DNA of 15,164 nt from Vitrella brassicaformis CCMP3155 (GCA_001179505.1 CDMY01000856.1:1-15164), one strand, 5' to 3'; positions 343 through 15,164 are shown, numbered from the stretch's first letter. Translations and numbers: made by a program. The notes: generated by a model not told the origin, from the sequence alone.

Positions 343-3300
343 TCATTGGTTCACCTGCATAAATGCATCAACCAACCGCTTCGCATTCACCTGCGCAACG
401 AGTGACATTCCTCTGATGGATCGATGTATGGCGACAGCGATAATAAATCCCTTCCTTACCTCTCGGTACCCCCGCTCGTTGAGAAGGCCACGCATGAAGT
501 CTCGGCAGCCTCTTCCGTCACCAGACTGCGAACAAATCGAACACCTCCAATGTACTTGTGTATGTCTTTGTGCGTCCCATCCTGCCTTACCTTCCGTGTG
601 TGCCTGGCATCTTCAGCATGGGTAATGGATGGGCCGCCCTTCCGAAACGAGACACTTGATTGCGATCGGGCACCCGCCATGGTACCCGCCAACGCCACCG
701 ATGGTGACTGGTCCGGAGAGACAGTGGAGACTTGCGTGCTGCTGGACGGCTCGGACCGGAATTTGGCATTCTTTTCGGCCTCTTGAAGCGTCTCTTCCCA
801 TTTCCTGGCAGCAGCAGCCTTGCCACCCGCTTGCTCGGCTTCGACTGCCAGGAGAAAATTGTGACAAAATGGTAGGATGGGGGCAGGAGAGACGTGAGTG
901 CTATGTGTGAGTGCGTACTTTGCCTGATGTTTGCCTCTGTGAGAGCCACTTGGACGGGCGAGGGCGCAGCTCGGGCGGTCTTAGCTCCTGCAGGATCGGT
1001 GGCCAAGAGATTGCATACTTAGGCCTTTCGCGGGCGCCAGGGTACATTTGGAAAAGCCTTGCTCACCTCTTGTTCCGCTTGGGACCGCCTTCAATCTCGA
1101 AGTGACGGCCTGAAGAGACAGCGACGTGAGATTCTGTCGCGCTTCACAAGTCGCAGCGTACCTTTGGTCCGGCTGCAAACTGCAGTGGCCCTCGCTCAGT
1201 GACTGTCTTACCGGCGGCGAAGGTTGTACCACTGTCAATACAGCATGGCGAGATTGGGTGTGATGTGAGTCTTATGCTGCTTCGATTGTTCCTTCTTTCC
1301 TTGTCTCACGTCGTTCTCGATGATGGTGTCTCCTTTGGCAGTGGACCGTACAACGGGTATACGCACAACGGTCCACACGCCTCCGCCACCTCTGTCCTCT
1401 TCTCAGCTGGTGCCTCCCCGCTCTCAGGCGAAGTGCCGTCCTCTTCTCGCTTGTCATCCGCTTTTTTCGCTGCCCTTTTCCCTCGCGAGATGAGCTCTTC
1501 TATGTTTGTGGCAAGGCAGACACCATGCCGGCCGACAACAGGCGTAAGTCGACGTAGGCGATGTGATGTAGAGGGGAATGCGAAAGGATCTACAGCTGGG
1601 AGATCGGCTTCAGAAGACGAAGCAGGCGCATTTGTGGTCGACCTGGAGGCGCTCCTGGCATACTTGCATACCTGCGGACGGGGAACCATGAGACACAGCA
1701 CAGCAGCATGCATCATGCATTTGCTCGGACTTTCTCTCGCCATGGCTTCTCACTTTCGTCCCCCTGGCCACATCGATGACTCGCATCTCACCCCTCGCAT
1801 CCAGCCCCACCACAATGGGACGAGCCACAGAGGGCTCACCGCTGTCGACAGACAGGTTCTGGACCGGCACATTCTCGCCGTTCTCCGTGGGCGACAGGCG
1901 CAGGGGAGCTGTATGTGTGTTGACGGACGAAGATGGGGTGGGCGAGGCCAAAGTTGTGAAGACAGCGGACACGTGAATAACTGGAGGGGGGTTGCCAGGG
2001 GGAGTGAAGGACAGCCGAAACAAAAGAACCCCGGATGCGCTCGCATACCCATGGACGTGCGCATCTGTGCCCGCGGTGATGAGCAAGCGGTTGCCAGGCG
2101 GGCCAAACGTCATAGCAGTGACTCTCGAGTAGTGCCGTCTCCCCACCGCAGCCAAGGCTAGCGTCTCGGAGTCGAAAATGAGTGGCGCGCCAGACTCCAG
2201 ACCAACCGCGAAGTGGTTGCCGCCTGCAAGTGGCGGACAGCTGAGGGGAGATGTTAGGGTCCACCGCTCTCGCACAGCCAACATAAGCGGGCTGGCAGCG
2301 TCCTCCTGCAGACACCAAAAGAGAGACAGAGAACTTATGCGGACTCTCACAAAAGCCATTCATCACCTGCTGTGGTGGCACAGCGAAGGCGAATACCAGT
2401 GGACGTCCCAGCGCACCCACAATGATATATGGAGATGCCCGCGTAGCCCCATCACGCAGCCCGCCCCGTCGGCAGCTGTCGCTGATCGGTGGGCGATTGG
2501 GATGCAAAAGATGAACATTAGTCACACAGAAGACGTTCTGCTGACCAGCCTGACCAGCTACAGGCTCTTCTGTACCACTTCCGTAGACAGGCAGGGGGGA
2601 AGAGAGAAAAGGTGAATCATGGGAATGGACTGATAGAGGTGCTTCAGGGCTTGACGTGGGATCGGGCACAATCGCAAAAGGTGTCGTGACGGTGGCTACA
2701 GGCTTGGTCTCTGCTGGCTTCGTCTCTCTGGAGGGCCCCAAGTCTGCGATTGATCCTGCCTTGAGGTCGGCTGGCTCGGCGTCTCTGTGAGTGGACGACA
2801 GCGGACTCGACGAAGCTCCCCGGCCCCCCAATGTGCGGTCTTGAAGTGGTGTGTCGGGGAGGGGGAGTGAGAATAGCCAATACTGATGGGTCGACGACTC
2901 ACATACCAACAGCTGTAACGACAAAGCAGCGGAACAGTGACAGTGGCGTTTGATTGGTGTCTCTGTATCATTGGTAACCTGGTTGTTCTCGCCAGCACTC
3001 AAGCGAGCCTCGCACACGACAGGCAGCTCGCTTGTCACCTCTGGCAGAAGCAGCCCTTCACCTTCCGGCACGACACGGCACACCGGCCGGAAAAAGGGTT
3101 GTTTGGTGGAAACGCAATAAACAGCTGCAGCCAGCATTCCCTCTCTCTTCTCCTCCCCACTTGTTGTGAAATAGGGCACTTTCGACGCCGGAAACACCGC
3201 TACACACGGTGGTGTCCACCCTCCTTCGGCCCACCCTCCCTCGGGCAGCCCCTTAGCATGAAGCCAGCTCGGGTTGGACGTTCGGATCATCCACACTCCC

Positions 3301-3981
3301 CCCACAGCACTCTTTTCAGCTTCTCCAGCTGCTGTGCCTTCGCCACCTGAAGGGCTGTCAGCATTGGCTGTCCGTGGAGGGGCTGAAGATGAGACAGAGG
3401 CACTGCTCTCGACCGCGAACGCCGGCCGACGTTCAAGCACAGCAGACGCCACACTGTCAGGGCTCAGCCTCCCCGGTGGTGATGGTGCGATGGCCATATC
3501 AATCAGACACAGCTCTCCCTCCGATGTGCCGCCCACCGCCCAATCACACATGCGTCCCAAAGAGGGCAGCCCGCTCCCAAATGATGCTGGAACCGGCCAA
3601 TCGCTGGGCAGCAGCGGTCCCGCGACAGCATTGAAGCGGCCAGTGACGGTCAGCAGTTGTGACCATGCGGGGAGGGACAGCTCGTTCTCATGGGCCCCTC
3701 TTTTTTTCTCAATCTCCTCGATGCCTTCATCCACATTCTGCTCGTGCACACAACGGGAAGAAGCGCCCACAGCCAGAGGTCACAAAGACACTCTCCTGTA
3801 TGTATGTGTTTGTCCGTGCGATGCCATGGCACCTGGAGCACAGCGGTGATGACCTTTTGGATGAGACCTGTCATGATGAGAAGGCACAACCAACAAGATG
3901 CGTTGCTGATGGAAAACGCCTGATGGTTGAGGGCTTACGGTATGGCTGAGGGAGCCTGTCCACGGTGAGGGCTGGGTCCAT
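343..3981 (-). CDS. WDR93: WDR93-like WD40-repeat protein (cilia/flagella-associated family), 11 exons, ~970 aa
   Basis: Exons (minus): 3981-3939, 3867-3833, 3737-2367, 2305-1754, 1671-1310, 1231-1162, 1109-1067, 987-919, 844-591, 525-460, 390-343. All 10 introns are GT-AG, 52-95 nt and phase-compatible. The spliced N-terminus MDPALTVDRLPQPYRLIQKVITAVLQNVDEGIEEIE matches the WDR93 hallmark D-x-LPQPYR-x-I-x-K (human LDSLPQPYRMINKLV, from memory). A WD repeat is clear in exon 4 (RRHYSRVTAMTFGPPGNRLLITAGTDAHVHGY). The last exon and stop are less certain because CAG|GTGAAC could be another donor. Confidence 0.75.
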
Positions 3982-4112
3982 CGTTGCACTGCCAAAACGC
4001 GCTGCTTGTGGCTATGCCAACAATCGCTTATCCGTCCGCTCGGAACGAGCGGGCTCAGCTCGCAGGTTCCATTTCACGGAGTGATCTCTGCCCCCTCTTG
4101 AGATGCGAACAG
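3982..4112. promoter_or_regulatory. Very short divergent (head-to-head) region between WDR93 and RRP6L3; candidate bidirectional promoter or overlapping 5' UTRs
   Basis: The WDR93 ATG is at 3981 on the minus strand, and the exonuclease coding frame is open from 4102 on the plus strand. No specific promoter motif was identified. Confidence 0.45.
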
Positions 4113-7100
4113 CCTCACCACATATCTCATCTACCGGGCCCTGTCTGATCCATTCATTCTCACGCCTCTGACACTCATCGCCGCTGCTCTTCTGGTCCAT
4201 GCCCTCCTCCCGCGGACAAAGCACAGGCGGCAGCGCTCGCCTTTGCGGCCCTTCGTGCACCCCAACAAGGTGCGCATCGCTTTGGAGCAGCCCTTCGACT
4301 GGTGCGGCGTCAAGTGGCATGAGTTGCTCAAGCGGCTGGCGGGTGAGAAGTCAGAGCATGAATGGTGGAGGGTGGGGCTCGTGGTGGTGACGACAGCGCT
4401 GCAGCTCAAGGCATGCGTCAGATTCCTCATGGCTGCTCCCGTGGTGAGTGAAACAAACCACAGGCATGTGCATGTGATCTGTGCACTTAGCTGCTTGGCC
4501 TGCCATCTGTCTGTCATCTGCCTCATCAGATCGGAGTCGATATCGGTCGGCTGCATGCCATGCATTGCTACAGTGACCGCCACAGACAATGAATAAATGC
4601 AGCCTCTGCCTCTTTCTTTGTGGTGTGTGCAGAGCACGGCACGGGAGGCTACCACGGCCGAGTGTGTCTGTTGCAGCTGTCGACCGGCACGGTGGACATC
4701 ATCGTGGATGCAATAGCGGAGGGTGTCCGGCCCGCAATCGCGCGCCTTCTCAGGCCCTTGTTTGAGGTACGGAAGTGCGTGACTGGTCGACGACGCACAC
4801 ACGATGGTTTATGGACGTGTGCTGTATGCTCAGTCGCAGAAGATCCTGAAGGTCTTTCACTCCGCCGAGAATGACATCATGTGGCTGCAGCGAGGTGAGT
4901 GGGTGGGGTGGCTGTGGGAGCGGGTGTGCAAAGCCGCCCAAGTGCCACGGCATGATATGTTCTGCGGCTGTGAGGCCCTCTCAGATTTCGCTCTGTCGGT
5001 CGTCAATGTGTTCGACACTCACCAGGCCTGCAGAGCTCTATCAAGTAAGCCCGAATGCACGGCGGCTGCCCTCAGCACAGCCCATGCATCTGTGTGGCCG
5101 TGTTCTCAGCACAGCCCATGCATCTGTGTGGGCGTGTTATGTCTGCAGGTGGCGTATCGGATCTGCCCCAGCTGTGGTCTGTCTTCTGCGACTTCCATCT
5201 CAACGCAACCGCAAAGAAGACCATGCAAGTGAGCAACACAGACATCCGTCCGTGAGGACCGCTTCCATTGCGCGCGTGTGTGCAGTGTTCCGACTGGTCG
5301 CGTCGGCCGCTCACGGACGAGCAGTTGCAGTATGCTCGGATCGACGCGCGCTTTCTCCCTCATCTCGCTGCCGCTCTGCTCTGGGCCATGTACAGGTCTG
5401 TAGCCATCACACACATACATGTGCCTGCCTCCCGGGCAAACACACGGTGGGTCGTTCCTCGTGTGTTTCTGTGTCAGCTTGGACGGCTTGCCGAGCAAGG
5501 ATGGGCAGCTGGGCGAGAGGGAGAGTGTGACCGATGAAGAGGGGAGAGTTTTGGGGGCGCTGTCCAGCATCGTGGCCTTGAAGCGCTCTCCGCTGCATTT
5601 TGCTCTCGACAGAGGAGAGGCAGAAGAGGACACCTCACCGATCCAGCCAGGACTGCCGAAAGTAACGCCAGCGACAGAGACTGAATGCAGCCGTCAGCTG
5701 TTTGATGCTTCCTACGGTATACTCAGGCCGCACCCGTCAGCCGGTGAAATCTCGTGAGGAGTTTGTCATGATTTGTCGGCGATTCCTCGAGGTGAAGGAC
5801 AGTGCCGCACACCGCAAGAGCAGCCAGGACAGCATCCGCATCGACAGTGAGGGAGATGAGGAAGAGGTGGATAGCGAGGACGATGTCGACCGCACGAGGG
5901 ATGGCGACGAGGCGGATCTATTTGGCGATGACGATGCTGTTCATGAGATGAATGAGGAGTCATCTCTGACGCGTCGCGTCATCGCGGATTTCACCAGACG
6001 GTGCAGGAGAGTGGTCATTCGGGAGTATCAGCCCCCGCCCCCCCTCTCACCCACAGCCCACCTTCCAGCGTTTCGCGAGCTCTCGCGTGGCAGACAAGAG
6101 CTTCACCTCACGCCGATGGCAGAGGAGATATTCCGTCGACTTTTCGCCGTCCGTGACGACATCGCACGCACCCGCGATGAGCCGCCCGAGAGCATCGTTC
6201 CTAACCAATTGCTGTTTGAGTGGTCTGTTTCTCCACCTCTCTCTCGGGCGGCGTTTATCGTGGACAACGTGCGGTCGATGTGGACGCACAGCTCGCCGCG
6301 TGTGTCGATAGTGGGGCTGCTGCGGCTCTATCATGCCATTGGCAGAGCGCTGCCGGCGAGAGATAGGGCCCAGCGGGTCGATGGGCAGGAAGGCGGGGGC
6401 AGTGGGGATGGATCTGCCGGGACGTTGGCGTACCGGGACGCGGCAACATGGACCAGGAACGGGTAAGCATCAATTATATTATGCGCCATCGCATCGCACC
6501 AGCGACTTTGCACTGCACGCAGGTGTATGCCCCATTTGGGTCACAAAGTGAGTTCGAGCGGGAGCTGGCGAGGCAGCCGCCCACTCTGCAGCAGCGAGTG
6601 CGGTCGCTGCCAGTGCTCAAGCGGGCCCGGTACCTCCACTTTGTCAGCCTGTTTAGCGCCAAGAAGCCCGTGTATGAGAACGTGGAGGTGTTGACGCCCG
6701 ACGGATTGGTGCTCTGTCACTGCGACAAACGAAAAGTTTGTCTGTCTGTCTGTCTGTCTGTGGGGAGGGAAAGACACTGGTCCACCTGCGGCGTGTGAAT
6801 GGGTACTCGTGTGTTCAGGCCAATTGGTACGTGAAGCGGCAGCTCGCGAGAAAAGAGTGCGACGTAAGTGCGATCCATGCAATGAACACACGTACATCCA
6901 TCGTTTTGCAACCCTTCTTTCTTTCGTCTGTGTCAGAGCCCCTTGCGGATCCGTCTGCTGTTCGAGCCCACGGGGCAGGAAGACGGGGACACTCAAGCGG
7001 CCACCCAAAAGGCCGAACGAAAGTGGGCGAGCCACACACACACAGCCAGCCAGCCTTTCTATACAGGTCACCCACGTGCATCGCATCCACTTGCCCTTTT

Positions 7101-8407
7101 GTCTTTTTCTCCAGTGCACGGCGGAAGGAGGAGAGAGACGGCGAGGGCAGCCTTTTCAGCGACGACCAGGACGCAGCAGCGGGGGCAGCTGGGCGGTCGA
7201 GTGAGTCCTGCTACGCCAGCAAGAAGGAGAACAGGTGTGTGGTGTGCGGGGTCGCCAGGAACTTCCTCCGCTACCACGCGGTGCCCACCTGCTACCGCTG
7301 CCATTTCCCGCCGCAGTACCGCTGCAATGGCAGCCACGACGTCATACTATTATGCGTCACGTGAGCCATCTTCCACAGAGCACACACATGTAGATGAATG
7401 TAATGTAATTATGATGTCGCGTTGTATGTTATGTGTGCAGGTGCCATGAAGAGGCGAGCAAACACGTGTTTCAGCTCAAGCAGCAGTTGGCGGACGAGTA
7501 CCAGGTGAGGAGGACACCTGCAGCACCGGAAAAGTGTGGACTGCATCCTACTGTCCGTGTGTTTTGGTTGCTCTCTCTGCAGGCCCCCCTCAACTGGTCG
7601 AACGAGGAACATCGGAAGCAGTCAGCCCGCGCATGTGCGGCCAGACGCGCGGCGGCTGCCCTACTCAGGTGAGTGAGCCACACCAGCACACCAGCATACA
7701 ACAGCCTTTCGGCCTAGGACCTTTCTGATGTGGCCATCTGCCTGTGCAGGTCAGGCGACTCGATGCCGCTCGATCGCATCCTAGAGCTGAAGAGCAAGCT
7801 GCTCGAGTGGAGGGACCACCTGCACAGCGAGAGAGAGGCCGGCTCTGACTCCGCCATCCCTGCCGACATCCAGGAAGGCCTCGACGCCCTCAGCAGCGGC
7901 ATTCGCAAGGTGCTGTTTGAGGAGGAGCCAACTGTGAGTGGCGAAGTGATTGCCGCCGCCCATGAGGCAGGGAAGGCTGGTCGATATAGGACGGGGGAGG
8001 GGTCTGACAGCGATGGGTCGAGGGATGGAACGGTCGACAACAAGGGCAAGAGCATGCGGTATGACCACGGCAAGGTGAGGAACCGATCGCTTTGACTGAC
8101 TGCACCCTCTCGCTCACTTTCTCACTGTCATGTGTGTGGTGTGTTTCCCTTTCCCCAGGTCGTTGCCGAGCGCGTCGACGACATAGGCGCCCTCATCCGG
8201 CGGTTTCGCGCCCACTTCGTGGAGACGATGAAGCCCCGATTCCTGCCTTCCAACTGGTGTGTCCAGCACAAAGTGAGTCGGTCGTTTGGCCGGTTCAGCA
8301 GATACCACCCCGACAACCAGCTGCCAAAGACTGAGACGGAGAGGGGCGAGAGTGAAGAAAAGCAGGGTGGTGCCAAGGCCACCCTCCTGCTAGCCACGCT
8401 GCAGTGA
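4113..8407 (+). CDS. RRP6L3: RRP6-like 3 (RRP6L3)-type 3'-5' exonuclease: N-terminal hydrophobic helix, DEDDy exonuclease, HRDC, C-terminal EXD2-like HNH/zinc domain; ~995 aa
   Basis: Exons: (putative 4014-4033), 4113-4443, 4530-4545, 4633-4766, 4834-4894, 4985-5044, 5149-5228, 5286-5395, 5478-5661, 5741-6462, 6523-6547, 6592-6735, 6819-6863, 6937-7022, 7115-7360, 7441-7504, 7583-7668, 7750-8074, 8159-8407; total 2988 nt, in frame. ExoI IGVDIEH, ExoII KVFHSAENDIMWLQRDF and ExoIII DWSRRPLTDEQLQYARID are intact. HRDC: RRLFAVRDDIARTRDEPPESIVPN. C-terminal blocks FSAKKPVYEN..DGLVLCHCDKRKANWY, LLFEPTG, KENRCVVCG..YRCHFP..SHDVILLCVTCH and FRAHFVETMKPRFLPSNWCVQH match EXD2/RRP6L3 from memory. The start codon and the 6463-6591 junctions are uncertain. 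Confidence 0.85.
5071..5138 (+). repeat. 34-bp tandem duplication (2 copies, 33/34 identical) inside exonuclease intron 5045-5148
   Basis: ctcagcacagcccatgcatctgtgtgg(c/g)cgtgtt at 5071-5104 and 5105-5138. Confidence 0.95.
6739..6761. repeat. (TGTC)n microsatellite in exonuclease intron 6736-6818
   Basis: tgtctgtctgtctgtctgtctgt directly after the GTTTGT donor. Confidence 0.9.
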
Positions 8408-8814
8408 GAGTATGAGCGGCTGGCGAGTCGTTTTTTGGTTGTGTGATGGCGGTTGTTGATCGTGTTGCAGCATGGATGGCGATGGATGGATGGATGAGTG
8501 TGTTGATTGCATGATAATTAGTGTACACTCCTAACTAGTACACGTGTGTAAGAATGTATGCCGTCTCGTGTCGCCACACACGTGTCACTGAGTGACACGT
8601 ATGTGTGTGTGCGAGCGAAACCGCTACTAACACATACATGTCATGTGACCGACGTGATCGAACACATACAGTACAGCACACCGGTCGTCATCGCTGCAGC
8701 CTCCATTTCTCAAATCAATCGCTGCCGGCGTGCTGGCATACGGCAGAGCAAATGCACCCATCCAGCGACGCACAAAACTGCCAGACCCTCCCTCCCTCCG
8801 CCCGCCCGGTTCCT

Positions 8815-9118
8815 TCATGCAACAGCATGAGGGTTAGAGAAATGCGTGCGAACCTCACTTCTTATCCACTCGAGAGCAGCCCACAGCGTCGAGCGCAAAT
8901 ACCCCTGCGCGCACACACACACGCGTCGGGCGTCCATCACAACACCGCAGCAGCATCGCATGACGGACTCACTGACCTCTTCGCTCTTGTTTTGCGATTC
9001 TGTGACGAAGCTCGTCATCAATGCACAGTCAGACACGATGGTCGACGGAGCGGACTGCACACAGGCAGGACAGGCAGGCAGGCAGGCAGGCAGGCACACA
9101 AAAAGACCACAGGCCTCA

Positions 9119-9156
<38 letters not shown>

Positions 9157-10914
9157 TGCGTGTGTGTGTCTCATGCCTTACCCAGCAGAGCATGAAGGCG
9201 AAGAGGGGCACCAGATTGTCAGCGTCGATCAGCCGTGTGGCCGATGCAGCGGTGAGCATGTTGTCACTGGAGCCCCCCTCGGTCCGTCGCGCCTCCTGCA
9301 CGTCAACCTCTATCTGACGCGCCACCCCTTGCAGCGCCGCCAGCTTCTGTCCTGGCGTGTCCAGGTGCGAAAGAGTCCCCAGCAGCCTGCATTGCATGAA
9401 GGTGCCAAACAGAGAGAGAGACACACAATGGTCACTGACGGCCGCCGTGCACGACCAATCTGTCACCAAATCGCGTTGGCAAAGGGCAAAGCGATCCCGC
9501 TGTGGGGCGGAGCAGGGGGCGCATGTCTTTTCACGCCCACACCACCACCAGCTCCACCAGCAGCTGGTGCAGCAGCAGCCGACTGTGGCGCAACAACAGG
9601 ACTCAGCAGGTTCTTCCGCAGATGGCTGTCCGCTCTCGGCCGCACAAACACCTTGTTCCTTCGCCAGTTCTTGCGCATGAGCGGAGAGGTGTCCTGGCTG
9701 CAGATGGATGCGGCGAGCGACTTCTGATGCGCGTAGGCGTGTGGGATGTGTGGGGTGAGGAGGGGCAGCGGGGAGGCGACGATGTCCTGCCAGAGGGGAG
9801 GAGCGGGGCCTGGCGAGGACGGCGGGACGCAGAAGTGGGGGTCCACCCCACAGGCCTCCGGCGAGGTGAAGAGACATGACGCTGCACACACAGGCGAGAG
9901 GGGTAGAGGGGCAGGTCCATCCGGCATCAGGCTTCAAAGCCTGCACACCTTGCTGCAGCGTCTCCTGTGTCTTCTCGTCTTCACTCAAATACGCCTCCCG
10001 ATACAGTGACACGACCTGAGAAGAAAGCACATTCCACAGAAGGCCGCCGTGATGTTCCTTCCTCGGGAGTATGTGTGTTGCGGCTCGCCTTTCGGCCGCC
10101 GGGTGTGGTAAAGAAATACGACACCAGCACCCTCATGGCACGGTCCTTCTTGCCCGTCGTCAGGTGGAATGGGAACGACGAGGCATACAGCCGCAAGAAG
10201 GCTCCATGCATGACGGCCAGGTGCCCCTTGACCCTTCCCACCAGACGGTCCAGGAACCGGCGTCTCTCCCCGGCCTCCTGCTGCCCCGCCTCCTCTTTCT
10301 TCTCTGAAGTCACGATGATCTTGGCTCGCTCATGCCGCTGCACCAGCGTCAGAATGTCGTCACTGGCGGCCTGCATCAGCTGGTGGATGGGGTGGGCCAT
10401 GCAGCTGATCCACGCAAGCATCACTTGCATACAGAAATCAGCGGGCGTCATCATCCCACACCACACCCTGCCGCTCTCGAGAGCCATTGCCAGGCCGGCA
10501 GCGAACTGGGAAGCCGCCAAGGCGGCACTCACCCACAAGGCCTCGGCATATGGAGTGCCTGCAGCCAGCCACACAAAGACGCATCGCATCCATACAAAGC
10601 TCTGTCAGACATCCCCCACACCCGCCTAGTATCACGTCACTTACACTCCACAATGCTCCGTGCAGTCCACTTTCGCTCGAGGTACTCTAAAGATGTCGCC
10701 CACGAAGAGGCAGGTGGGCGCATGCATGGCAATCAGCCTGTCTGAACGGCTCTGCATACCTACCTCGCCACGAGCTCGTGTGGAGGGCCCGGGCATTCAA
10801 CGACGATGACTGATGGGGCGCATGGCACCTCCGCTTGAGCTTGTCGATGTACTCCTTACAGGGCCTGGGCCAGCCCCATTTCTTGTTCTTGCGCTTGGGT
10901 AAGATATTCCCCAT
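8815..10914 (-). CDS. VPS9-domain protein (VPS9D1-like Rab5-family guanine nucleotide exchange factor)
   Basis: Well-supported 3' exons (minus): ..-10089, 10015-9949, 9881-9467, 9386-9182, 9054-8977, 8904-8815. The spliced VPS9 core reads PFANAIWLLGTLSHLDTPGQKL...IDADNLVPLFAFML...IVSDCALMTSFVTESQNKSEEGYLRSTLWAALEWI, with the A-D-x-x-x-P aspartate finger and the E-G-Y motif. The probable start is ATG at 10914 (MGNILPKRKNKK). Exon structure between ~10830 and ~10380 and the exact stop are not resolved. Confidence 0.8.
9071..9169. repeat. Compound microsatellite (CAGG)n ... (TC)n(TG)n in VPS9 gene intron 9181-9055
   Basis: (CAGG)n at ~9071-9094, (TC)10 at 9119-9138, imperfect (TG)n at 9139-9169. 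Confidence 0.95.
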
Positions 10915-11295
10915 CTGTTCTTTCGGGGAGAGAGCTGAGGGAGAAGTGGGGCCGGCTGTGGGGGCAAGGATTGGTTTCACGATCGCTCTACCCCACTGAC
11001 GGCGCGTGTTTCTGGGGTGGGACGTTTCGTTCGTGCCAATCGTGAGGAAAAGTACTTGACTTGACGCCTGACGCACCTTACTGCCTACGCGTGTCTGTCC
11101 GGGACAAACTGACGTATACACTCACTCATGAAATAAAAACCACTCAATGACAGACACCACACAACACAACGCGAGAATAAACATGACTACGCTACGCTCC
11201 AACCAAAAATACCTTGACGTACACTGACTCACTCAGCTGGCAATGGTCTGTCTCACTGTGACTAATACGCTCTACATAGCGGCATTCGCGTTAGC

Positions 11296-14200
11296 TTATT
11301 CTGTGCCTTTCCAGTGGAGCCGTGCCAGCACTGCAGNNNNNNNNNNNNNNNNNNNNNNNNNNNNNNNNNNNNNNNNNNNNNNNNNNNNNNNNNNNNNNNN
11401 NNNNNNNNNNNNNNNNNNNNNNNNNNNNNNNNNNNNNNNNNNNNNNNNNNNNNNNNNNNNNNNNNNNNNNNNNNNNNNNNNNNNNNNNNNNNNNNNNNNN
11501 NNNNNNNNNNNNNNNNNNNNNNNNNNNNNNNNNNNNNNNNNNNNNNNNNNNNNNNNNNNNNNNNNNNNNNNNNNNNNNNNNNNNNNNNNNNNNNNNNNNN
11601 NNNNNNNNNNNNNNNNNNNNNNNNNNNNNNNNNNNNGCGCTTCGTCGAGCCGACGATCCTTTGTCCACCGCCCACGCAGCGATGGCGGGATCTCGCTCAC
11701 CTGGGAAAACTGCACACAACACAACACACGCAATCAACGAATGCCATGCACGCACCAACCGTATGTATCGTCTGGTCTGGTTGTTGTTGGTGTGCCCTGC
11801 CCGTGCTTCCACACCGACCTTGATTTGTATGTGCGATCGGTGCAGCCGCAGCGAGCCGAGGTCCAGCTCAGCAAAGCCGGCGAAGCCCTTGGAGTACCAC
11901 GACCCCACCACCACCCGCCCGTTGTCGCGCGTCACCCTCAGCGCCCCGTCCAGCGCTGTCGGCCGCCCACTCACCTCTATCACACAGTCGAAGGGGCTGG
12001 GTGGGTCGTGGGCAGAAGAAGGGGCCAGCACCGCAGACGCACCGGCCTCTCTCGCGAGACGGCGCCTTTGCTCGGAGGGGTCGATGGCCGTCACGTGCCA
12101 GCGTTGGCGAGCCAGCAGATAGGTCACCAGCAGGCCTATCAGGCCCTGGCCAAACACGGCCACCTGCTCACCTGCAAGACATCCACACACACACACACAC
12201 ACACATATGCCAGGAGCCTCCCTCTAATCTCTATAGATCTGTCTCCTCATTGCCCACCCACCTGGCACAGGGCTGGCGTCCTGCAGTAGCGAGAGTGCGG
12301 TCTCCATTGCCGGCAGGAAGATGGCGTCGTCCACGGGCACGTCGGGGGGCAGCCGTGTGCACGACGACAGCGGCACGATCGCCCTCTCCTCGTGAGAGTG
12401 AAACGCAAAGACCTTCTGGCCCAGCCACGACAACCGGTCCACGCCAGAGCCACACCTGAATGGAGAAGGAGAATTTCCACTCATAGCTGACGTGCGATCG
12501 TGAATGTGAAGGTCGCCCGCCTCGCCCACCTGACGCATTTGCCGGCGAGGGAGTAGCCGTATGTGAGTGGGTATCTGAGCGGCGTGGCCGTCATGCCCTC
12601 GATGGCTGTGTCCAGCGGCTCGCCCTCGATGAAGTCGCCCTGGTAGACCTTGAGCTCCGTCCCGCTGCTGATCAACGAATAGGCCGACTCCACCTCCACC
12701 TGCAGGCATCGCATCCACACACCAAATGTGTGGTGGTGGAGTGCAATGGGTTTGTGGGTGGCGGGCGGGGCTTACGTGTCCTGGGGGCACTTTGGTGGCT
12801 TGGGGCCGGTCTCTGAGCTCTACCCGCGAGGGGCCGCTGAAGACCACCTGGCGGCTGGGAAAGGCAGCCGCCACATCTGAGTACACACACACACACACAG
12901 AGACACATCATGGGTTCATTCACACGCGTGTGAGCGTCTGTCTATCCACATACATCCATACCGGCGGGCAGTGTGCCGAGAATGTCGACGTTTTTGACCT
13001 GAACTGTGGACTGTTTGTCGGTGTGGTGCTTGACCCATGCTGGCAGGTCCCAGTGGGGCAGCAGCTCGCAGCTCTTGAGCGCACCCATGGCCAAGAACGA
13101 CATCAGACACTGCCACATGTACTTATGGTCCGCGAACGGCACCGACCACTCCGACGCACCTAAACGAACCACACCCACACACCCATATGGGGGCTGTCCA
13201 TCCATCCATCCATCCAGTTGACCTCACCCTGCATCATGATTTGCCCTTTTCGCGATTCGATGGCCCTGACGAGCTTGGAGGGGTCGGTCGATTGGCCCTC
13301 TCTCCTCAGGTGCTCGTGGTACAGACTCACCACCTGCCGGTCGGTCGGCAGCGCCCCGCCGCCGAAGAACGGCGGGTCAAATATCGTCCTGCCGGCGTAG
13401 GTGATCGGCATGTACAAGAGCGCCCCTGCACACGCACACACACACTCGTGCATATGTGTCGACGTGTGTGGCAGGGCAGGGTCCCTACATACCTCGTGCG
13501 ATCCTAGTGAGGTGGTTGATGAGCACGTCCTGGTCCATCAGGTCGGCGAAGGAGCACCCCAAGACGACGTCGAAGCCGTGCTGCCCATCAGCCGTGTCGA
13601 GAAGGTCGCCCTCCACCAGCACCAGGTAGATAGTGCCGCCGCCCCGGTCGGCCTTGCGGTAGACGCGCTCCCGAGGATGGAAGCCGAAGCTCTCATCGAC
13701 CTCCTCGAACCCCATCAGCTCGGTGGCACTCTCGCGATTGGCCTGACACAGACAGACACAGCCAGAGAGCATGCTAGTGTCTGTCGCTTGCAGGCTTGTG
13801 TGTGGTCTCTCTCGTTGTCTGTCTGACCTGCATCACGGCGCGTGAGGTGTCGACGGCAACGTAGACGAGCGCGTCGCCCCGGCCCTTCCACTGATGCCCC
13901 TCCCATAGGCCCAGCACCCGCACCAGCATGCCCAGCGTCCCCGCCCCCACATCCAGCACCCTCACGCCGCAATCCCTCGGCTCCTTCTCGCGGAACCTCG
14001 CCACGAAGGCCTCCCACGTGTCTTCGTTGAAGGCGTGGCAGTCGATGGCCTTCTTGGCGGAGAGGTAAGCGAGCGGGTCGAAGTGGAAGGTGGATTGGGG
14101 CGGGGCGCACTTGATGAGGGACGCTAGGGACTGCTCGAGGGTGGATGGAGAGGTGGGGAGAGGGGTCAGGGACACGCCTGAAACAACAGGACGATGTGCG

Positions 14201-15164
14201 TTTGTCTGTCTATCCGAGTGGGTGGGTACCTTTGATGGCATGTGAGATGGCCCGCACGCTGCTGTCGATGACTTCAGGGTCATCAATCACCACCAGCTCC
14301 TTCTCCCCCCCTCCCAGCACCTTCCACGCCTCCCGCAGCCTCTCATACTGAGGCCCCCTGCCGCCCTCGCCGATAAACGCCTCACCCCCCACCATCATGA
14401 CGCCCCCCCTGCCCGGCATCACAATGCGCGACACCATCGAAGATGGAAAACACCGTGAGTAGAAGAGCATGTGCCCGGGGGAGGTCCACCGCAAGAGGTC
14501 CCTGATCCACCTTGGCGTGGCGCCTTCGCTCGCCATGTGCTGCCACCCTGTCGGCGTAGTGCTTTCCTTCCGGCCGTCCCTGTCGTCTGTCTGCCCGCTG
14601 AGTCGCGCAGTCTCCTTGTTGAGGAGGTATGCCGTGAGCTCCTTCTCGATCGCCGCCCAGCCGCCCCTCTCCTTGCTGTCGAGACACCGCCGCACAATGG
14701 CTTTCACCTCAGCCGACGCGATCAGGTCCACATTGAAGGCGATCGGTGGCAGGAGGGCGGCAGCTCCTGATTGGGGGGTGTCCAGCGGGCCCTCGAATGA
14801 CGCGGAGGTGGCGAGTGGGTCGGGGCCGTCGGAGAGGGTGATGGTGAGCGACGAGAGGGGCTCGGGAGGGCTCTGTCGGTCTGCTGGCGGGAGGGCCAGA
14901 TATGCGGAACGGACTCTCTCCCACAAGTAGCGTGACAGCTGCAGCAATAGAGGAAGAAACATATTTATTTATGGAGGGGAGGGAAGGCAATCGCGCCTGT
15001 CTGCCTGCCTGCCTGCCTGCCTGCCTGGCCTTTGCTCGCTGACTGACCATTTCCAGCGTCCAGTTCTCCCCCTTCATGGCTTCGATCTCCTCCAAGTTGC
15101 GGTAGGCCAGCCCCCCCACCGCCTCACCCAGCAAAGCCTGACACATCCCAATATCGACCAGGAA
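11296..15164 (-). CDS. Multidomain fusion enzyme (5'-truncated by window edge): PTPS/QueD-like T-fold + degenerate HAD-like + class I SAM methyltransferase + MDR (cd08255/BchC-like) dehydrogenase
   Basis: Exons (minus): 15164-15048, 14938-14230, 14177-13828, 13742-13493, 13425-13228, 13159-12962, 12876-12776, 12699-12530, 12455-12262, 12171-11819, 11709-11637(gap). All 10 introns are GT-AG and phase-compatible, giving ~904 stop-free codons. The probable stop lies after the gap at 11296 (..VLARLHWKGTE*) or 11262. Confidence 0.8.
11337..11636. other. Assembly gap (300 N)
   Basis: Run of N from 11337 to 11636. Confidence 0.99.
11637..12876 (-). other. Domain: medium-chain dehydrogenase/reductase, cd08255 (BchC-like) type
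   Basis: VVFSGPSRVEL, SLISSGTELKVYQG, YPLTYGYSLAG, LGQKVFAFHSHE, AMETAL, Rossmann motif VAVFGQGLIG, FDCVIEVSGRPTALDGA, GRVVVGSWY, LHRSHIQIKFSQVSEI..LRGRWTKDRR. Confidence 0.88.
12184..12205. repeat. (CA)n microsatellite in fusion-gene intron 12261-12172
   Basis: About 11 CA units; a similar tract lies at 12883-12899 in intron 12961-12877. Confidence 0.95.
12962..14095 (-). other. Domain: class I SAM-dependent methyltransferase
   Basis: YLSAKKAIDCHAFN, motif I VLDVGAGTLGM, YVAVD, FDVVLGCSFADLMD, GGALLYMPITYAGRTIFDP, GASEWSV and C-terminal NVDILG. This resembles the methyltransferase subfamily of prokaryotic PTPS/dehydrogenase/glycosyltransferase clusters (YLxAKxxVDDRALN; GxSDWVV), from memory. 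Confidence 0.8.
14780..15164 (-). other. Domain: C-terminal half of a 6-pyruvoyl-tetrahydropterin synthase / QueD (COG0720)-like T-fold domain
   Basis: FLVDIGMCQALLGEAVGGLAYRNLEEIEAMKGENWTLEMLSRYLWERV...LSSLTITLSDGPDPLATSASFEGPL aligns by eye with the actinobacterial COG0720 pattern VVDIG..L...L.YRNLD.....G.NT(S/T)xE.LA......L...L.VTL.ES..AWASYE. Confidence 0.7.
15001..15026. repeat. (CTGC)n microsatellite in fusion-gene intron 15047-14939
   Basis: ctgcctgcctgcctgcctgcctgcct. Confidence 0.95.

What the first reader, a model, noticed from the sequence alone, without database searches (positions are those of the whole stretch)
11296..15164. A prokaryote-type pterin-modification gene cluster apparently fused into one intron-rich eukaryotic polyprotein
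One spliced frame (~904 codons, 10 phase-matched GT-AG introns, no stop) carries a COG0720 PTPS/QueD-like domain, an unknown HAD-like segment, a SAM methyltransferase and a cd08255-type dehydrogenase. Seen directly: the methyltransferase-dehydrogenase junction (..KNVDILGTLPA|DVAAAFPSRQVVFSGP.., phase-1 intron 12961-12877) and the PTPS-to-methyltransferase path are continuous. From memory: these same subfamilies occur as separate adjacent genes, often with a GT4 glycosyltransferase and GTP cyclohydrolase II/III, in actinobacterial and haloarchaeal clusters (the so-called PTPS-IV group) whose product is not established. Inference: a horizontally acquired operon was collapsed into one multi-enzyme protein making an uncharacterised GTP-derived (pterin-like), methylated and redox-modified metabolite in a protist. 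The upstream part outside the window may hold the missing cluster enzymes.
Basis: partly seen in the sequence, partly recalled or inferred. Interest (0 to 1): 0.88.

Follow-up and report, generated by a model that had tools for sequence, protein, structure and literature searches.

The report
Algal fusion of PTPS-IV cluster enzymes
This is a real, transcribed gene of the alga Vitrella brassicaformis that joins in one protein three enzyme types which bacteria and archaea encode side by side in a widespread GTP-based gene cluster with no established product, so the fusion ties those enzymes to one pathway and shows that marine algae have it too.

Summary
On the minus strand, 11 exons joined by 10 GT-AG introns give 904 codons with no stop. 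Spliced transcript contigs show every intron. The window is a whole 15,164-bp contig of Vitrella brassicaformis CCMP3155, so the gene is cut at its 5' end.

A second copy on a 316-kb contig shows the full design:
- three PTPS-IV/SCO6650-type T-fold repeats;
- a decayed nucleotidase-type HAD-like segment;
- a class I SAM methyltransferase;
- a BchC-like medium-chain dehydrogenase.

The N gap probably hides about 105 in-frame bases of the last exon. The stop codon is at 11296-11298.

At least 600 bacterial and archaeal genomes hold the dehydrogenase subfamily. In the 80 best loci it sits beside PTPS (71), a GT4 glycosyltransferase (63), RibD_C (58), this same methyltransferase subfamily (42) and GTP cyclohydrolase II (41). 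Haloferax uses GTP cyclohydrolase III instead.

The fusion of cluster enzymes is real, but it is old and shared with Chromera, diatoms, a bolidophyte and uncultured marine eukaryotes. The HAD part is not a cluster gene. Domain order is not collinear with the operon. The upstream part holds more T-fold repeats, not GT4 or a cyclohydrolase. The donor and the product remain unknown.

The parts
14819..15164 (-). C-terminal half of the third PTPS-IV/SCO6650-like T-fold repeat. It comprises exon 1 (15164-15048), intron 15047-14939 and the start of exon 2, and it is cut by the contig end. This repeat is degenerate: it has no FGPAQ motif, and Ser stands where the other repeats have the Glu that (from my own knowledge) anchors the pterin ring in PTPS/QueD.
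   Evidence: The PDB search with the paralog's repeats gives 3D7J SCO6650 at E 2.2e-15, and the alignment covers the window-encoded residues. Exon 1 alone gives 3D7J as its best hit, E 0.012. Pfam PTPS scores 1.6e-15 on the full-length paralog. Repeat alignment.
14104..14758 (-). HAD-like remnant (rest of exon 2, intron 14229-14178, start of exon 3). It stands where stramenopile homologues have an intact SDT1/XMP-phosphatase-type HAD domain. The Vitrella version has NVD in place of DxD and SRCLP in place of ASNSP, but keeps IDD.
   Evidence: It has no sequence homologue outside its own cluster among 1.84 billion representatives and no Pfam hit. It aligns collinearly with the stramenopile HAD domain; hhalign gives E 8e-4 but probability only 24%. 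The stramenopile domain itself hits TIGR01993 at 7e-14 and PDB 7EF6 at 1.2e-13. In the AlphaFold model this part has pLDDT 35-72.
12962..14103 (-). Class I SAM-dependent methyltransferase domain (exons 3-6, with introns 13827-13743, 13492-13426 and 13227-13160). It belongs to the subfamily encoded in the prokaryotic PTPS/DH/GT4 clusters.
   Evidence: BLASTP against the cluster methyltransferases gives E 1e-13 (L003) and 4e-13 (L008). tblastn finds it beside the dehydrogenase in 26 of 80 prokaryotic loci. The AlphaFold model has pLDDT above 90 here, and Foldseek matches small-molecule methyltransferases with probability 1.0, E 1e-9. Pfam methyltransferase models stay below threshold.
11637..12876 (-). 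BchC-like medium-chain dehydrogenase/reductase domain (exons 7-11, with introns 12775-12700, 12529-12456, 12261-12172 and 11818-11710). It runs into the assembly gap.
   Evidence: Pfam ADH_zinc_N scores 39 bits against a cutoff of 31.8. The best NCBIfam family is BchC, TIGR01202, at 1.9e-18 but far below its cutoff. Identity to stand-alone prokaryotic and eukaryotic homologues is 40-47%.
12877..12961 (-). Phase-1 intron at the methyltransferase-dehydrogenase junction.
   Evidence: GT..AG ends. An X1 transcript contig is spliced here (table 8, record 2).
11337..11636 (.). Assembly gap (N). It probably hides about 105 bases, or 35 codons, of exon 11 and no intron.
   Evidence: The L002 comparison finds both flanks exactly, with 105 nt between them and the frame kept. 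An X1 contig runs on into the gap.
11296..11336 (-). The last 12 codons (AVLARLHWKGTE) and the stop codon TAA at 11298-11296.
   Evidence: Translation in the frame predicted from the paralog. The C-terminus is the same as that of P0003.

Best explanation
The region is the 3' two-thirds of a nuclear, intron-rich Vitrella brassicaformis gene for one large multi-enzyme protein, about 1275 aa in the full-length second copy.

The order of its parts is:
1. three tandem PTPS-IV/SCO6650-type T-fold repeats, which could form a single-chain pseudo-trimer; only repeat 2 keeps the FGPAQ signature and the ring-anchoring Glu;
2. a decayed nucleotidase-type HAD domain;
3. a class I SAM methyltransferase;
4. 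a BchC-like NAD(P)-dependent medium-chain dehydrogenase.

The T-fold, methyltransferase and dehydrogenase parts are the eukaryotic counterparts of neighbouring genes in a widespread bacterial and archaeal cluster: GTP cyclohydrolase II or III, RibD_C reductase, DH, PTPS, GT4, MT, and often a CDP-alcohol phosphatidyltransferase.

Shown:
- the single ORF and its splicing;
- the domain identities;
- the homology to the cluster genes and their adjacency in prokaryotes;
- the shared architecture in other algae.

Inferred:
- The protein acts on a GTP-derived intermediate that keeps the 2-amino-4-oxopyrimidine ring. This would be the ring-opened product of a type II/III cyclohydrolase, possibly reduced to the ribityl form.
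- The T-fold module would bind or convert that intermediate, the methyltransferase would methylate it, and the dehydrogenase would oxidise or reduce a side-chain alcohol or ketone. The fusion would serve to hand intermediates from one site to the next.
- The methyltransferase-dehydrogenase core entered eukaryotes once, long ago, most likely from a prokaryote. It gained a HAD phosphatase domain and, in the chromerid-type lineage, the T-fold repeats.
For: - Gene model and transcripts.
- Organism and contig.
- Full-length second copy: three T-fold repeats with Pfam PTPS 1.6e-15, and FGPAQ in repeat 2.
- FGPAQ is the published PTPS-IV signature, and its neighbourhood holds PF00925 and PF01872 (PMC5445326, PMC5041015).
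- The best solved relative is SCO6650, 3D7J, E 2.2e-15.
- The methyltransferase is homologous to the cluster methyltransferase and has a class I fold.
- The dehydrogenase is 40-47% identical to the cluster dehydrogenase and BchC-like.
- Cluster composition in the 80 best prokaryotic loci: PTPS 71, GT4 63, RibD_C 58, MT 42, GCH II 41, CDP-OH_P_transf 29, LPG_synthase_TM 27.
- Gene tables of three clusters, and Haloferax larsenii with GCH_III-DH-PTPS-GT4 contiguous.
- Same architecture in Chromera and in marine contigs, one of them an intronless ORF among eukaryotic genes. HAD-MT-DH architecture in diatoms and Triparma.
- Eukaryotic sequences lie on one side of a branch in the dehydrogenase tree (SH-aLRT 99) and in the methyltransferase tree (SH-aLRT 100).
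Against: - No enzyme of the cluster has a demonstrated reaction. From my own memory of the structure paper, SCO6650 lacks PTPS activity. The chemistry proposed here is inference only.
- The T-fold repeat encoded in the window is degenerate, and Vitrella's HAD-like part has lost motifs I and II, so parts of the protein may be structural only.
- The PTPS genes of the 80 prokaryotic clusters closest in dehydrogenase sequence carry WGxEN or PGPEG, not FGPAQ. The T-fold part and the MT/DH parts may therefore come from different prokaryotic sources.
- The domain order differs from the operon order.
- The trees are unrooted 'quick' trees. Actinobacteria were not sampled, and most 'eukaryotic' rows are unnamed metagenomic proteins labelled by architecture alone.
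- I could not check whether Vitrella has the cyclohydrolase, RibD_C and GT4 partners.
Confidence: 0.8

Rival explanations
1. The protein was assembled stepwise inside eukaryotes, not by the collapse of an acquired operon. The MT-DH pair (with HAD) arose or arrived first, and the T-fold repeats were added later from a separate source in the chromerid-type lineage.
For: Stramenopile homologues have HAD-MT-DH and no PTPS. The eukaryotic order PTPS-HAD-MT-DH is not collinear with the prokaryotic order DH-PTPS-GT4-MT. The eukaryotic T-folds are of the FGPAQ type, whereas the clusters closest in dehydrogenase sequence have WGxEN or PGPEG. HAD is absent from the clusters.
Against: All three catalytic parts still trace to the same kind of cluster. 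That is hard to explain by chance unless the genes were acquired together or selected for the same pathway. Stramenopiles could equally have lost PTPS secondarily or split it off. No rooted tree was made for the PTPS part.
Confidence: 0.35
2. The pathway is not a pterin pathway. The enzymes act on ribosyl- or ribityl-aminopyrimidine intermediates, as in flavin or deazaflavin (F420/FO) synthesis. In prokaryotes the product may be glycosylated or attached to a phospholipid.
For: The clusters carry GTP cyclohydrolase II or III and RibD_C, not cyclohydrolase I. CDP-alcohol phosphatidyltransferase and LPG_synthase_TM are frequent neighbours. The stramenopile HAD resembles nucleotide monophosphate phosphatases. 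PMC5041015 states, as unpublished work, that PTPS-IV is involved in F420 synthesis.
Against: T-fold proteins of this family usually bind pterins or 7-deazapurine precursors. No FO-synthase genes were seen in the gene tables of the clusters I read. No biochemical data exist.
Confidence: 0.3
3. The family is old and vertically inherited in eukaryotes, or it moved from eukaryotes to prokaryotes. There was no transfer from a prokaryote into eukaryotes.
For: Eukaryotic dehydrogenase and methyltransferase sequences form one group that is not nested within the sampled prokaryotes, and the trees are unrooted.
Against: At least 600 prokaryotic genomes from many bacterial and archaeal phyla carry the clustered form. 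Named eukaryotic holders are few and mostly algae with red-type plastids.
Confidence: 0.1
4. The 'polyprotein' is an artefact. It is really separate adjacent genes, a mis-assembly, or bacterial contamination.
For: The contig is short (15 kb), has an N gap inside the gene, and ends within the gene. The second copy also has a gap with a duplicated segment.
Against: Ten spliceosomal introns are confirmed by spliced contigs with no mismatch. The reading frame is open across all the domain junctions. The neighbouring genes are eukaryotic. Independent orthologues have the same architecture.
Confidence: 0.03

Closest known systems
SCO6650 of Streptomyces coelicolor (PDB 3D7J), the PTPS-IV subgroup of COG0720
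   Same: It is the best solved relative of the T-fold repeats, E 2.2e-15, including the window-encoded tail. The signature AHSFRG..FGPAQ..HGAT is shared with repeat 2 of the second copy. HGA stands in place of the HGH zinc motif. The published neighbourhood of PTPS-IV holds GTP cyclohydrolase II and RibD_C (PMC5445326).
   Different: SCO6650 is a single 152-aa domain that, from my own knowledge, forms a homo-hexamer. Here three repeats are fused in one chain, two of them degenerate, and they are joined to other enzymes. The function of SCO6650 itself is unknown.
Prokaryotic gene cluster GCH II/III - RibD_C - DH - PTPS - GT4 - MT (Chloroflexota, Desulfobacterota, haloarchaea, methanogens and others)
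   Same: The dehydrogenase is 39-46% identical. The methyltransferase is homologous, E 1e-13. A PTPS gene is adjacent in 71 of 80 loci.
   Different: The cluster consists of separate genes in a different order. It includes GT4, a cyclohydrolase and RibD_C, which are not in the eukaryotic protein, and it lacks HAD. Its PTPS has an intact HxH zinc motif and WGxEN or PGPEG instead of FGPAQ.
Homologues in Chromera velia (A0A0G4F2G1, 1332 aa) and in uncultured marine eukaryotes (P0004, P0005)
   Same: They share the PTPS-repeat - spacer - MT - DH architecture and are collinear over about 1100 residues at about 31% identity.
   Different: P0004 and P0005 keep three well-conserved T-fold repeats and a DVD motif I. 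One is an intronless ORF. Vitrella's repeats 1 and 3 and its HAD part have decayed.
Stramenopile HAD-MT-DH proteins (Seminavis, Entomoneis, Triparma and many metagenomic sequences)
   Same: The methyltransferase and dehydrogenase are collinear at 31-34% identity, and they fall in the same eukaryotic clade.
   Different: They have no PTPS repeats. Their N-terminal HAD domain is intact (DVDNTLY, ASNSP, PTK, DDS) and is of the SDT1/XMP-phosphatase type.
BchC (3-hydroxyethyl bacteriochlorophyllide a dehydrogenase, TIGR01202)
   Same: It is the best curated family match of the dehydrogenase domain (1.9e-18), and both belong to the medium-chain dehydrogenase superfamily.
   Different: The score of 66.6 bits is far below the family cutoff of 291 bits, so this is not a BchC orthologue. 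The genomic and fusion context is unrelated to bacteriochlorophyll synthesis.

Membership tests
PTPS-IV / SCO6650-like T-fold (COG0720) | Match to the PTPS/QueD T-fold profile | tested here: met
   Pfam PF01242 scores 1.6e-15 on the full-length second copy. 3D7J scores 2.2e-15, and its alignment includes the window-encoded residues. On the window exon alone the match is weak, E 0.012, because the contig ends inside the repeat.
PTPS-IV / SCO6650-like T-fold (COG0720) | FGPAQ signature (PMC5445326, citing PMC5041015) | tested here: inconclusive
   The signature is present in repeat 2 of the second copy and in P0004, P0005, P0007 and P0033. It is absent from repeat 3, the only repeat that reaches into the window. 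The matching part of the window's own gene lies beyond the contig end.
PTPS-IV / SCO6650-like T-fold (COG0720) | Gene neighbourhood with GTP cyclohydrolase II (PF00925) and RibD_C (PF01872) | not testable with these tools
   This holds for the prokaryotic relatives. In Vitrella the partners, if any, are not adjacent, and the rest of the genome could not be searched.
Canonical PTPS/QueD enzymes (PTPS-I/II/III) | CxxxHGH, CxxxxxHGH or ExxHGH motif with the full His3 zinc site | tested here: not met
   The repeats read ..HGAT.. or ..HGAV.., so the third His is lost, and there is no Cys or Glu at the motif position. It should not be filed as a 6-pyruvoyl-tetrahydropterin or 6-carboxy-tetrahydropterin synthase.
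Class I SAM-dependent methyltransferase | Rossmann-like methyltransferase fold with a GxGxG SAM loop and an acidic residue after strand 2 | tested here: met
   The motifs VLDVGAGTLG and YVAVDTS are present. The model has pLDDT above 90, and Foldseek matches many small-molecule methyltransferases with probability 1.0.
Class I SAM-dependent methyltransferase | Pfam methyltransferase model above its gathering score | tested here: not met
   The best match is Methyltransf_23, E 0.018, 15 bits against a cutoff of 27. The subfamily is divergent. Homology to the cluster methyltransferase rests on BLASTP E 1e-13.
   PF00107 scores 39-43.6 bits against a cutoff of 31.8. The motif FGQGLIG is present.
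   66.6 bits against a cutoff of 291. It is BchC-like but not BchC. CDD itself was not available, so the cd08255 assignment as such was not tested.
HAD phosphatase, SDT1/XMP-phosphatase type | Motif I DxDx(T/V), motif II S/T, motif III K, motif IV DD | tested here: not met
   Vitrella has NVDLI for motif I and SRCLP where the homologues have ASNSP. Only IDD (motif IV) is kept. The stramenopile homologues have all four motifs.
HAD phosphatase, SDT1/XMP-phosphatase type | Profile similarity to a recognised HAD domain | tested here: inconclusive
   hhalign against the stramenopile HAD alignment gives E 8e-4 and probability 24%, and the match is collinear. There is no Pfam or NCBIfam hit. The structure model is of low confidence in this part.
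Rosetta-stone fusion of operon partners | The fused domains are encoded by separate adjacent genes in other genomes | tested here: met
   DH, PTPS and MT lie within about 3 kb of one another in most of the 80 prokaryotic loci and in the gene tables.

The most novel reading that the evidence does not exclude
Chromerids, diatoms and other marine algae, like hundreds of bacteria and archaea, make a still undiscovered GTP-derived small molecule or cofactor. It would come from a type II/III cyclohydrolase product and would be methylated and redox-tailored. In prokaryotes it would also be glycosylated and perhaps attached to a phospholipid through the CDP-alcohol phosphatidyltransferase. The algal fusion is a ready-made, single-polypeptide route to its core. 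The triple T-fold would be a single-chain pseudo-trimer that keeps one working site.
Probability: 0.3. Interest if true: 0.8.

Novelty: new variant of a known kind. Interest (0 to 1): 0.62.

Why it matters
The PTPS-IV group has been flagged for years as a COG0720 subfamily with no published function (PMC5041015, PMC5445326). From my own knowledge, its structural representative SCO6650 has no known activity.

A natural fusion of the T-fold, methyltransferase and dehydrogenase in one eukaryotic protein is independent evidence that these enzymes act in one pathway, over and above operon adjacency.

It also moves the question into organisms that matter ecologically (diatoms) and evolutionarily (chromerids, the photosynthetic relatives of apicomplexan parasites). 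And it offers a single expressible protein for finding the product.

The methyltransferase subfamily is recognised by no Pfam or NCBIfam model above threshold, and the dehydrogenase only by the general ADH_zinc_N model, so current annotation ('alcohol dehydrogenase-like', 'unnamed protein product') hides all of this.

Tried and rejected
- Exon-by-exon Pfam and NCBIfam scans found only the dehydrogenase cofactor domain; the other exons are too short or too divergent.
It found only the gene's own cluster plus one spurious repeat protein. That was useful for retrieving P0001 and for showing that the HAD-like segment is an orphan at sequence level.
- The word-indexed search with the methyltransferase part alone found nothing. 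Homology to the cluster methyltransferase came only from direct pairwise comparison once the clusters were in hand.
- The ESM Atlas look-up of P0005 gave only generic dehydrogenase clusters at non-significant scores.
- Literature searches for the cluster, for SCO6650/SCO6655 and for chromerid pterin genes found nothing beyond the two papers cited. Phillips 2012 and the SCO6650 structure paper are not held. What I say about SCO6650 lacking PTPS activity and Sco6655 making the formylated ring-opened product is therefore from memory.
- Earlier notes of this scan had nothing on this place or topic.
- The 143-aa internal repeat in the annotated 1418-aa paralog was considered as a real exon duplication. 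I rejected it as a probable scaffolding artefact, because it flanks a 300-N gap and the second copy is 99.1% identical to the window contig.
- The contig of the PTPS-GT4 fusion protein P0033 could not be read as DNA.

Full report
**What is in the sequence**

The gene lies on the minus strand. I read the three frames and joined 11 exons: 15164-15048, 14938-14230, 14177-13828, 13742-13493, 13425-13228, 13159-12962, 12876-12776, 12699-12530, 12455-12262, 12171-11819 and 11709-11637. Together they give 2713 nt, 904 codons and no stop. All ten introns (52-109 nt) begin with GT and end with AG.

**Transcripts**

Public runs hold this stretch. Laying four of them on 11637-15164 showed all ten joints in assembled contigs.
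- Nine joints are in the joint table as CT..AC on the plus strand, at the positions of my model.
- The tenth (12171/12262) and the 12876/12962 junction appear as adjacent pieces of single contigs.
- One X5 contig of 1707 nt with no mismatch covers 12962-14765 across four introns.
- An X1 contig covers 13120-12541 across the methyltransferase-dehydrogenase junction.
- Further contigs link on to 15048 and to 11637, and run beyond both ends.

The mature mRNA is therefore continuous across every domain boundary, and it comes from this copy of the gene.

**Origin and the 5' end**

- The exhaustive search with exon 2 returned an 880-aa database protein, 100% identical (P0001).
- That protein is CEM35485.1 of Vitrella brassicaformis CCMP3155, and the window is the complete 15,164-bp contig CDMY01000856.1. 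The gene is therefore cut by the contig end.
- The same 90% cluster holds a 1418-aa protein (P0003) on the 316-kb contig CDMY01000603.1.
- The two loci are 96.9% identical in exons and 93.2% in introns, with many indels. They lose similarity about 300 bp after the stop and have different downstream genes. They are diverged copies, not one locus.

**The gap**

- In the second locus, the 30 bases before the window's gap and the 25 bases after it are both found exactly. They are 105 bases apart, with no intron.
- That reading runs ..RRLDEA-[35 codons]-AVLARLHWKGTE-stop. The window's post-gap bases give AVLARLHWKGTE-stop in precisely the frame that a 105-base fill requires. An X1 contig also continues 187 nt into the gap.
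- The two sides are therefore almost certainly one exon. The 300 N are a placeholder, and the stop is at 11298-11296.
- The annotated P0001 jumps the gap with an invented splice.
- The second locus has its own 300-N gap, flanked by two copies of exon 10-11. The second of these is 99.1% identical to the window. The 143-aa internal repeat in P0003 is thus probably a scaffolding artefact, and the true protein is about 1275 aa.

**Domains**

1. T-fold.
   - P0003 matches Pfam PTPS (1.6e-15, two stretches). Aligned with its relatives, it has three tandem repeats.
   - The homologues P0004 and P0005 have three clean PTPS matches (4e-49 and 4e-45).
   - Repeat 2 reads AHSFRGKSFGPAQRMHGAT. FGPAQ is the published PTPS-IV signature (PMC5445326, citing PMC5041015).
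   - The best solved relative is SCO6650 of Streptomyces coelicolor, 3D7J, at 2.2e-15. The alignment runs through the residues encoded by window exon 1 and the start of exon 2. Exon 1 alone still picks 3D7J first, at E 0.012.
   - The repeat that reaches into the window (repeat 3) lacks FGPAQ and lacks the first His. It has Ser where the other repeats have the Glu that, in PTPS/QueD, anchors the pterin ring (the role of that Glu is from my own knowledge). It is probably only structural.
   - None of the repeats has the CxxxHGH or ExxHGH motifs of the characterised PTPS classes.

2. HAD-like segment.
   - It has no homologue outside its own cluster among 1.84 billion representatives and no Pfam or NCBIfam hit.
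   - In the stramenopile homologues the same position holds a domain with perfect HAD motifs: DVDNTLY, ASNSP, PTK and DDS. That domain hits TIGR01993 pyrimidine 5'-nucleotidase (7e-14, below cutoff). As a profile it hits the Arabidopsis XMP phosphatase 7EF6 (1.2e-13) and yeast SSM1/SDT1.
   - Vitrella aligns collinearly (TGWQH to TGYSH, IDDP to DDS), but with hhalign probability of only 24%. The catalytic motifs I and II are lost.
- I read it as a decayed HAD domain, at about 65%.

3. Methyltransferase.
   - Pfam models stay below threshold, and the word-indexed search found no stand-alone relative.
   - Direct comparison with the methyltransferase genes of the prokaryotic clusters gives E 1e-13 and 4e-13 over 210-250 residues. 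Shared motifs are YLxAKKxxD, LDxGAG, FxDLxD and LYH.
   - An AlphaFold model built on 33 homologues has pLDDT above 90 over this domain. Foldseek matches small-molecule class I methyltransferases with probability 1.0.

4. Dehydrogenase.
   - ADH_zinc_N scores above its cutoff.
   - The best curated family is BchC (1.9e-18), but far below its cutoff.
   - The nearest solved relatives are threonine, iditol, butanediol and galactitol-phosphate dehydrogenases. These are enzymes that act on secondary alcohols of polyol-like chains.

**Prokaryotic context**

- The dehydrogenase domain has stand-alone relatives at 40-47% identity.
- Three of them, from Anaerolineales, Desulfobacteraceae and another MAG, sit in the same gene row: CDP-OH_P_transf, LPG_synthase_TM, (MT), GTP_cyclohydro2, RibD_C, DH, PTPS, GT4, MT.
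- In the 80 best loci (Chloroflexota, Desulfobacterota, haloarchaea, methanogens, Bathyarchaeia, Cohnella, Methylococcaceae and others), tblastn finds these genes beside the dehydrogenase:

| Gene next to the dehydrogenase | Loci (of 80) |
|---|---|
| PTPS | 71 |
| GT4 glycosyltransferase | 63 |
| RibD_C | 58 |
| Cluster methyltransferase | 42 |
| GTP cyclohydrolase II | 41 |
| CDP-alcohol phosphatidyltransferase | 29 |
| LPG_synthase_TM | 27 |

- The Vitrella methyltransferase domain itself hits 26 of these loci directly. The HAD-like query hits none.
- In Haloferax larsenii the row is GCH_III (2e-87), DH, PTPS, GT4, with the genes end to end.
- One difference: the PTPS genes in these 80 clusters read GGDWG(P/A)EN..HSHHY, or PDPGPEG..HSH in haloarchaea. 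They keep the HxH zinc motif, whereas the eukaryotic repeats are of the FGPAQ/HGA (SCO6650) type.

**Eukaryotic distribution and history**

A length-matched search with the full protein found these architectures:
- Chromera velia (1332 aa): PTPS plus DH.
- Marine metagenomic proteins P0004 and P0005: three PTPS repeats, spacer, MT, DH. P0005 is collinear with Vitrella over about 1080 residues.
- About 25 proteins of 800-1250 aa, including Triparma verrucosa, Entomoneis paludosa and Seminavis robusta: HAD-MT-DH without PTPS.

P0005 is an intronless 3738-nt ORF on TARA contigs, among eukaryotic genes for an mRNA capping enzyme and a protein kinase. Stand-alone dehydrogenases of the same clade occur in Teleaulax and Phaeothamnion, and in a Stephanoeca transcriptome.

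In a dehydrogenase tree of 119 rows, the 36 eukaryotic or fusion rows lie on one side of a branch (SH-aLRT 99). In a methyltransferase tree of 66 rows, the 26 fusion rows do the same (SH-aLRT 100).

Caveats on the trees:
- they are quick, unrooted trees;
- most of the fusion rows are unnamed;
- actinobacteria are missing;
- haloarchaeal rows sit nearest the eukaryotic group in both trees, but on long branches, so I draw no conclusion about a donor.

The simplest reading is one old origin of the MT-DH core in eukaryotes, not a recent transfer into Vitrella. A prokaryotic source is likely from the distribution: hundreds of genomes in many phyla against a few algal lineages. It is not proven.

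**How it probably works (inference)**

- From my own knowledge, type II and III GTP cyclohydrolases open the imidazole ring of GTP to a (formyl)diamino-ribosylaminopyrimidinone phosphate, and RibD_C-type reductases reduce the ribosyl group to ribityl.
- T-fold proteins bind the 2-amino-4-oxopyrimidine face of such molecules.
- The intact HAD of the stramenopile proteins is of a nucleotide-monophosphate phosphatase type.
- The methyltransferase has a small-molecule fold.
- The dehydrogenase's relatives oxidise secondary alcohols of polyol chains.

I therefore propose that the protein binds a GTP-derived pyrimidine or pterin-like intermediate on the T-fold module, methylates it, and oxidises or reduces its side chain. 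The fusion would serve channelling.

In Vitrella only repeat 2 looks able to bind a ligand, and the HAD part looks inactive. Whether the final molecule is a pterin, a flavin- or deazaflavin-like compound, or a glycosylated or lipid-linked head group in prokaryotes cannot be decided here. PMC5041015 mentions unpublished evidence for a role of PTPS-IV in F420 synthesis.

**Verdict**

- It needs correcting on four points: age and spread (shared by several algal groups), the 'operon collapse' mechanism (not collinear, HAD added, PTPS absent in stramenopiles), the content of the missing upstream part (more T-fold repeats, no GT4 or cyclohydrolase), and certainty about transfer.
- I found no paper describing this fusion in the library available to me.
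- I class it as a new variant of a known but uncharacterised system, of moderate to high interest.

Noticed in passing
L002 14560-14859 and flanks (CDMY01000603.1): The second copy of the gene has its own 300-N gap between two copies of exon 10-intron-exon 11. The copy after the gap is 99.1% identical to window 11637-12197, and the copy before it 94.7%. The 143-aa internal repeat in the annotated 1418-aa protein is probably a scaffolding artefact that mixes the two loci.
   Followed up: partly
window 11109-15164 versus L002 11037-15757: The two gene copies are 96.9% identical in exons and 93.2% in introns, with many indels. Similarity fades about 300 bp after the stop, and the downstream genes differ (VPS9 here; a PLD-like gene and a FAD monooxygenase there). 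They are a recent duplication or strongly diverged haplotypes.
   Followed up: partly
window 13160-13227 and 13426-13492 (introns): Short repeats, (GGAT)n-like and (GT)n, collect 10-40 times the neighbouring contig depth in all four runs and produce many false joints and loose ends. The motifs are common across the genome.
   Followed up: no
window 1296-10914: The annotation has four other genes on the contig: a VPS9-domain protein (about 8815-10914, minus strand), a 442-aa protein with no Pfam match (about 6448-8407, plus strand), a DNA_pol_A_exo1 3'-5' exonuclease protein (about 4429-5747, plus strand), and a 915-aa protein with no Pfam match (from about 3981 downwards, minus strand).
   Followed up: no
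L029 9206-12497 (Haloferax larsenii): GTP cyclohydrolase III, the dehydrogenase, PTPS and GT4 lie end to end with gaps of only 5-10 bp, and an MFS transporter lies nearby. This is a compact archaeal form of the cluster in a genus that has genetic tools.
   Followed up: partly
L003/L006/L008 and 27-29 of 80 loci: A CDP-alcohol phosphatidyltransferase and an LPG_synthase_TM protein often precede the cluster. This hints that the prokaryotic product may be linked to a membrane lipid.
   Followed up: no
L089-L091 10001-13738: The full PTPSx3-spacer-MT-DH protein is encoded by an intronless ORF on marine (TARA and other) contigs with eukaryotic neighbours. This suggests a compact-genome picoeukaryote, whose identity I could not establish.
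   Followed up: partly
L002 7750-9823 (minus strand): A gene for an NAD-dependent epimerase/dehydratase is transcribed divergently, about 180 bp upstream of the full-length fusion gene. It may share a promoter and possibly a function.
   Followed up: no
P0033 (948 aa; contig not readable as DNA): A PTPS-GT4 fusion protein whose T-fold is almost identical in motif to SCO6650, with a RibD_C gene nearby. It is a second, different fusion of partners from the same cluster.
   Followed up: partly
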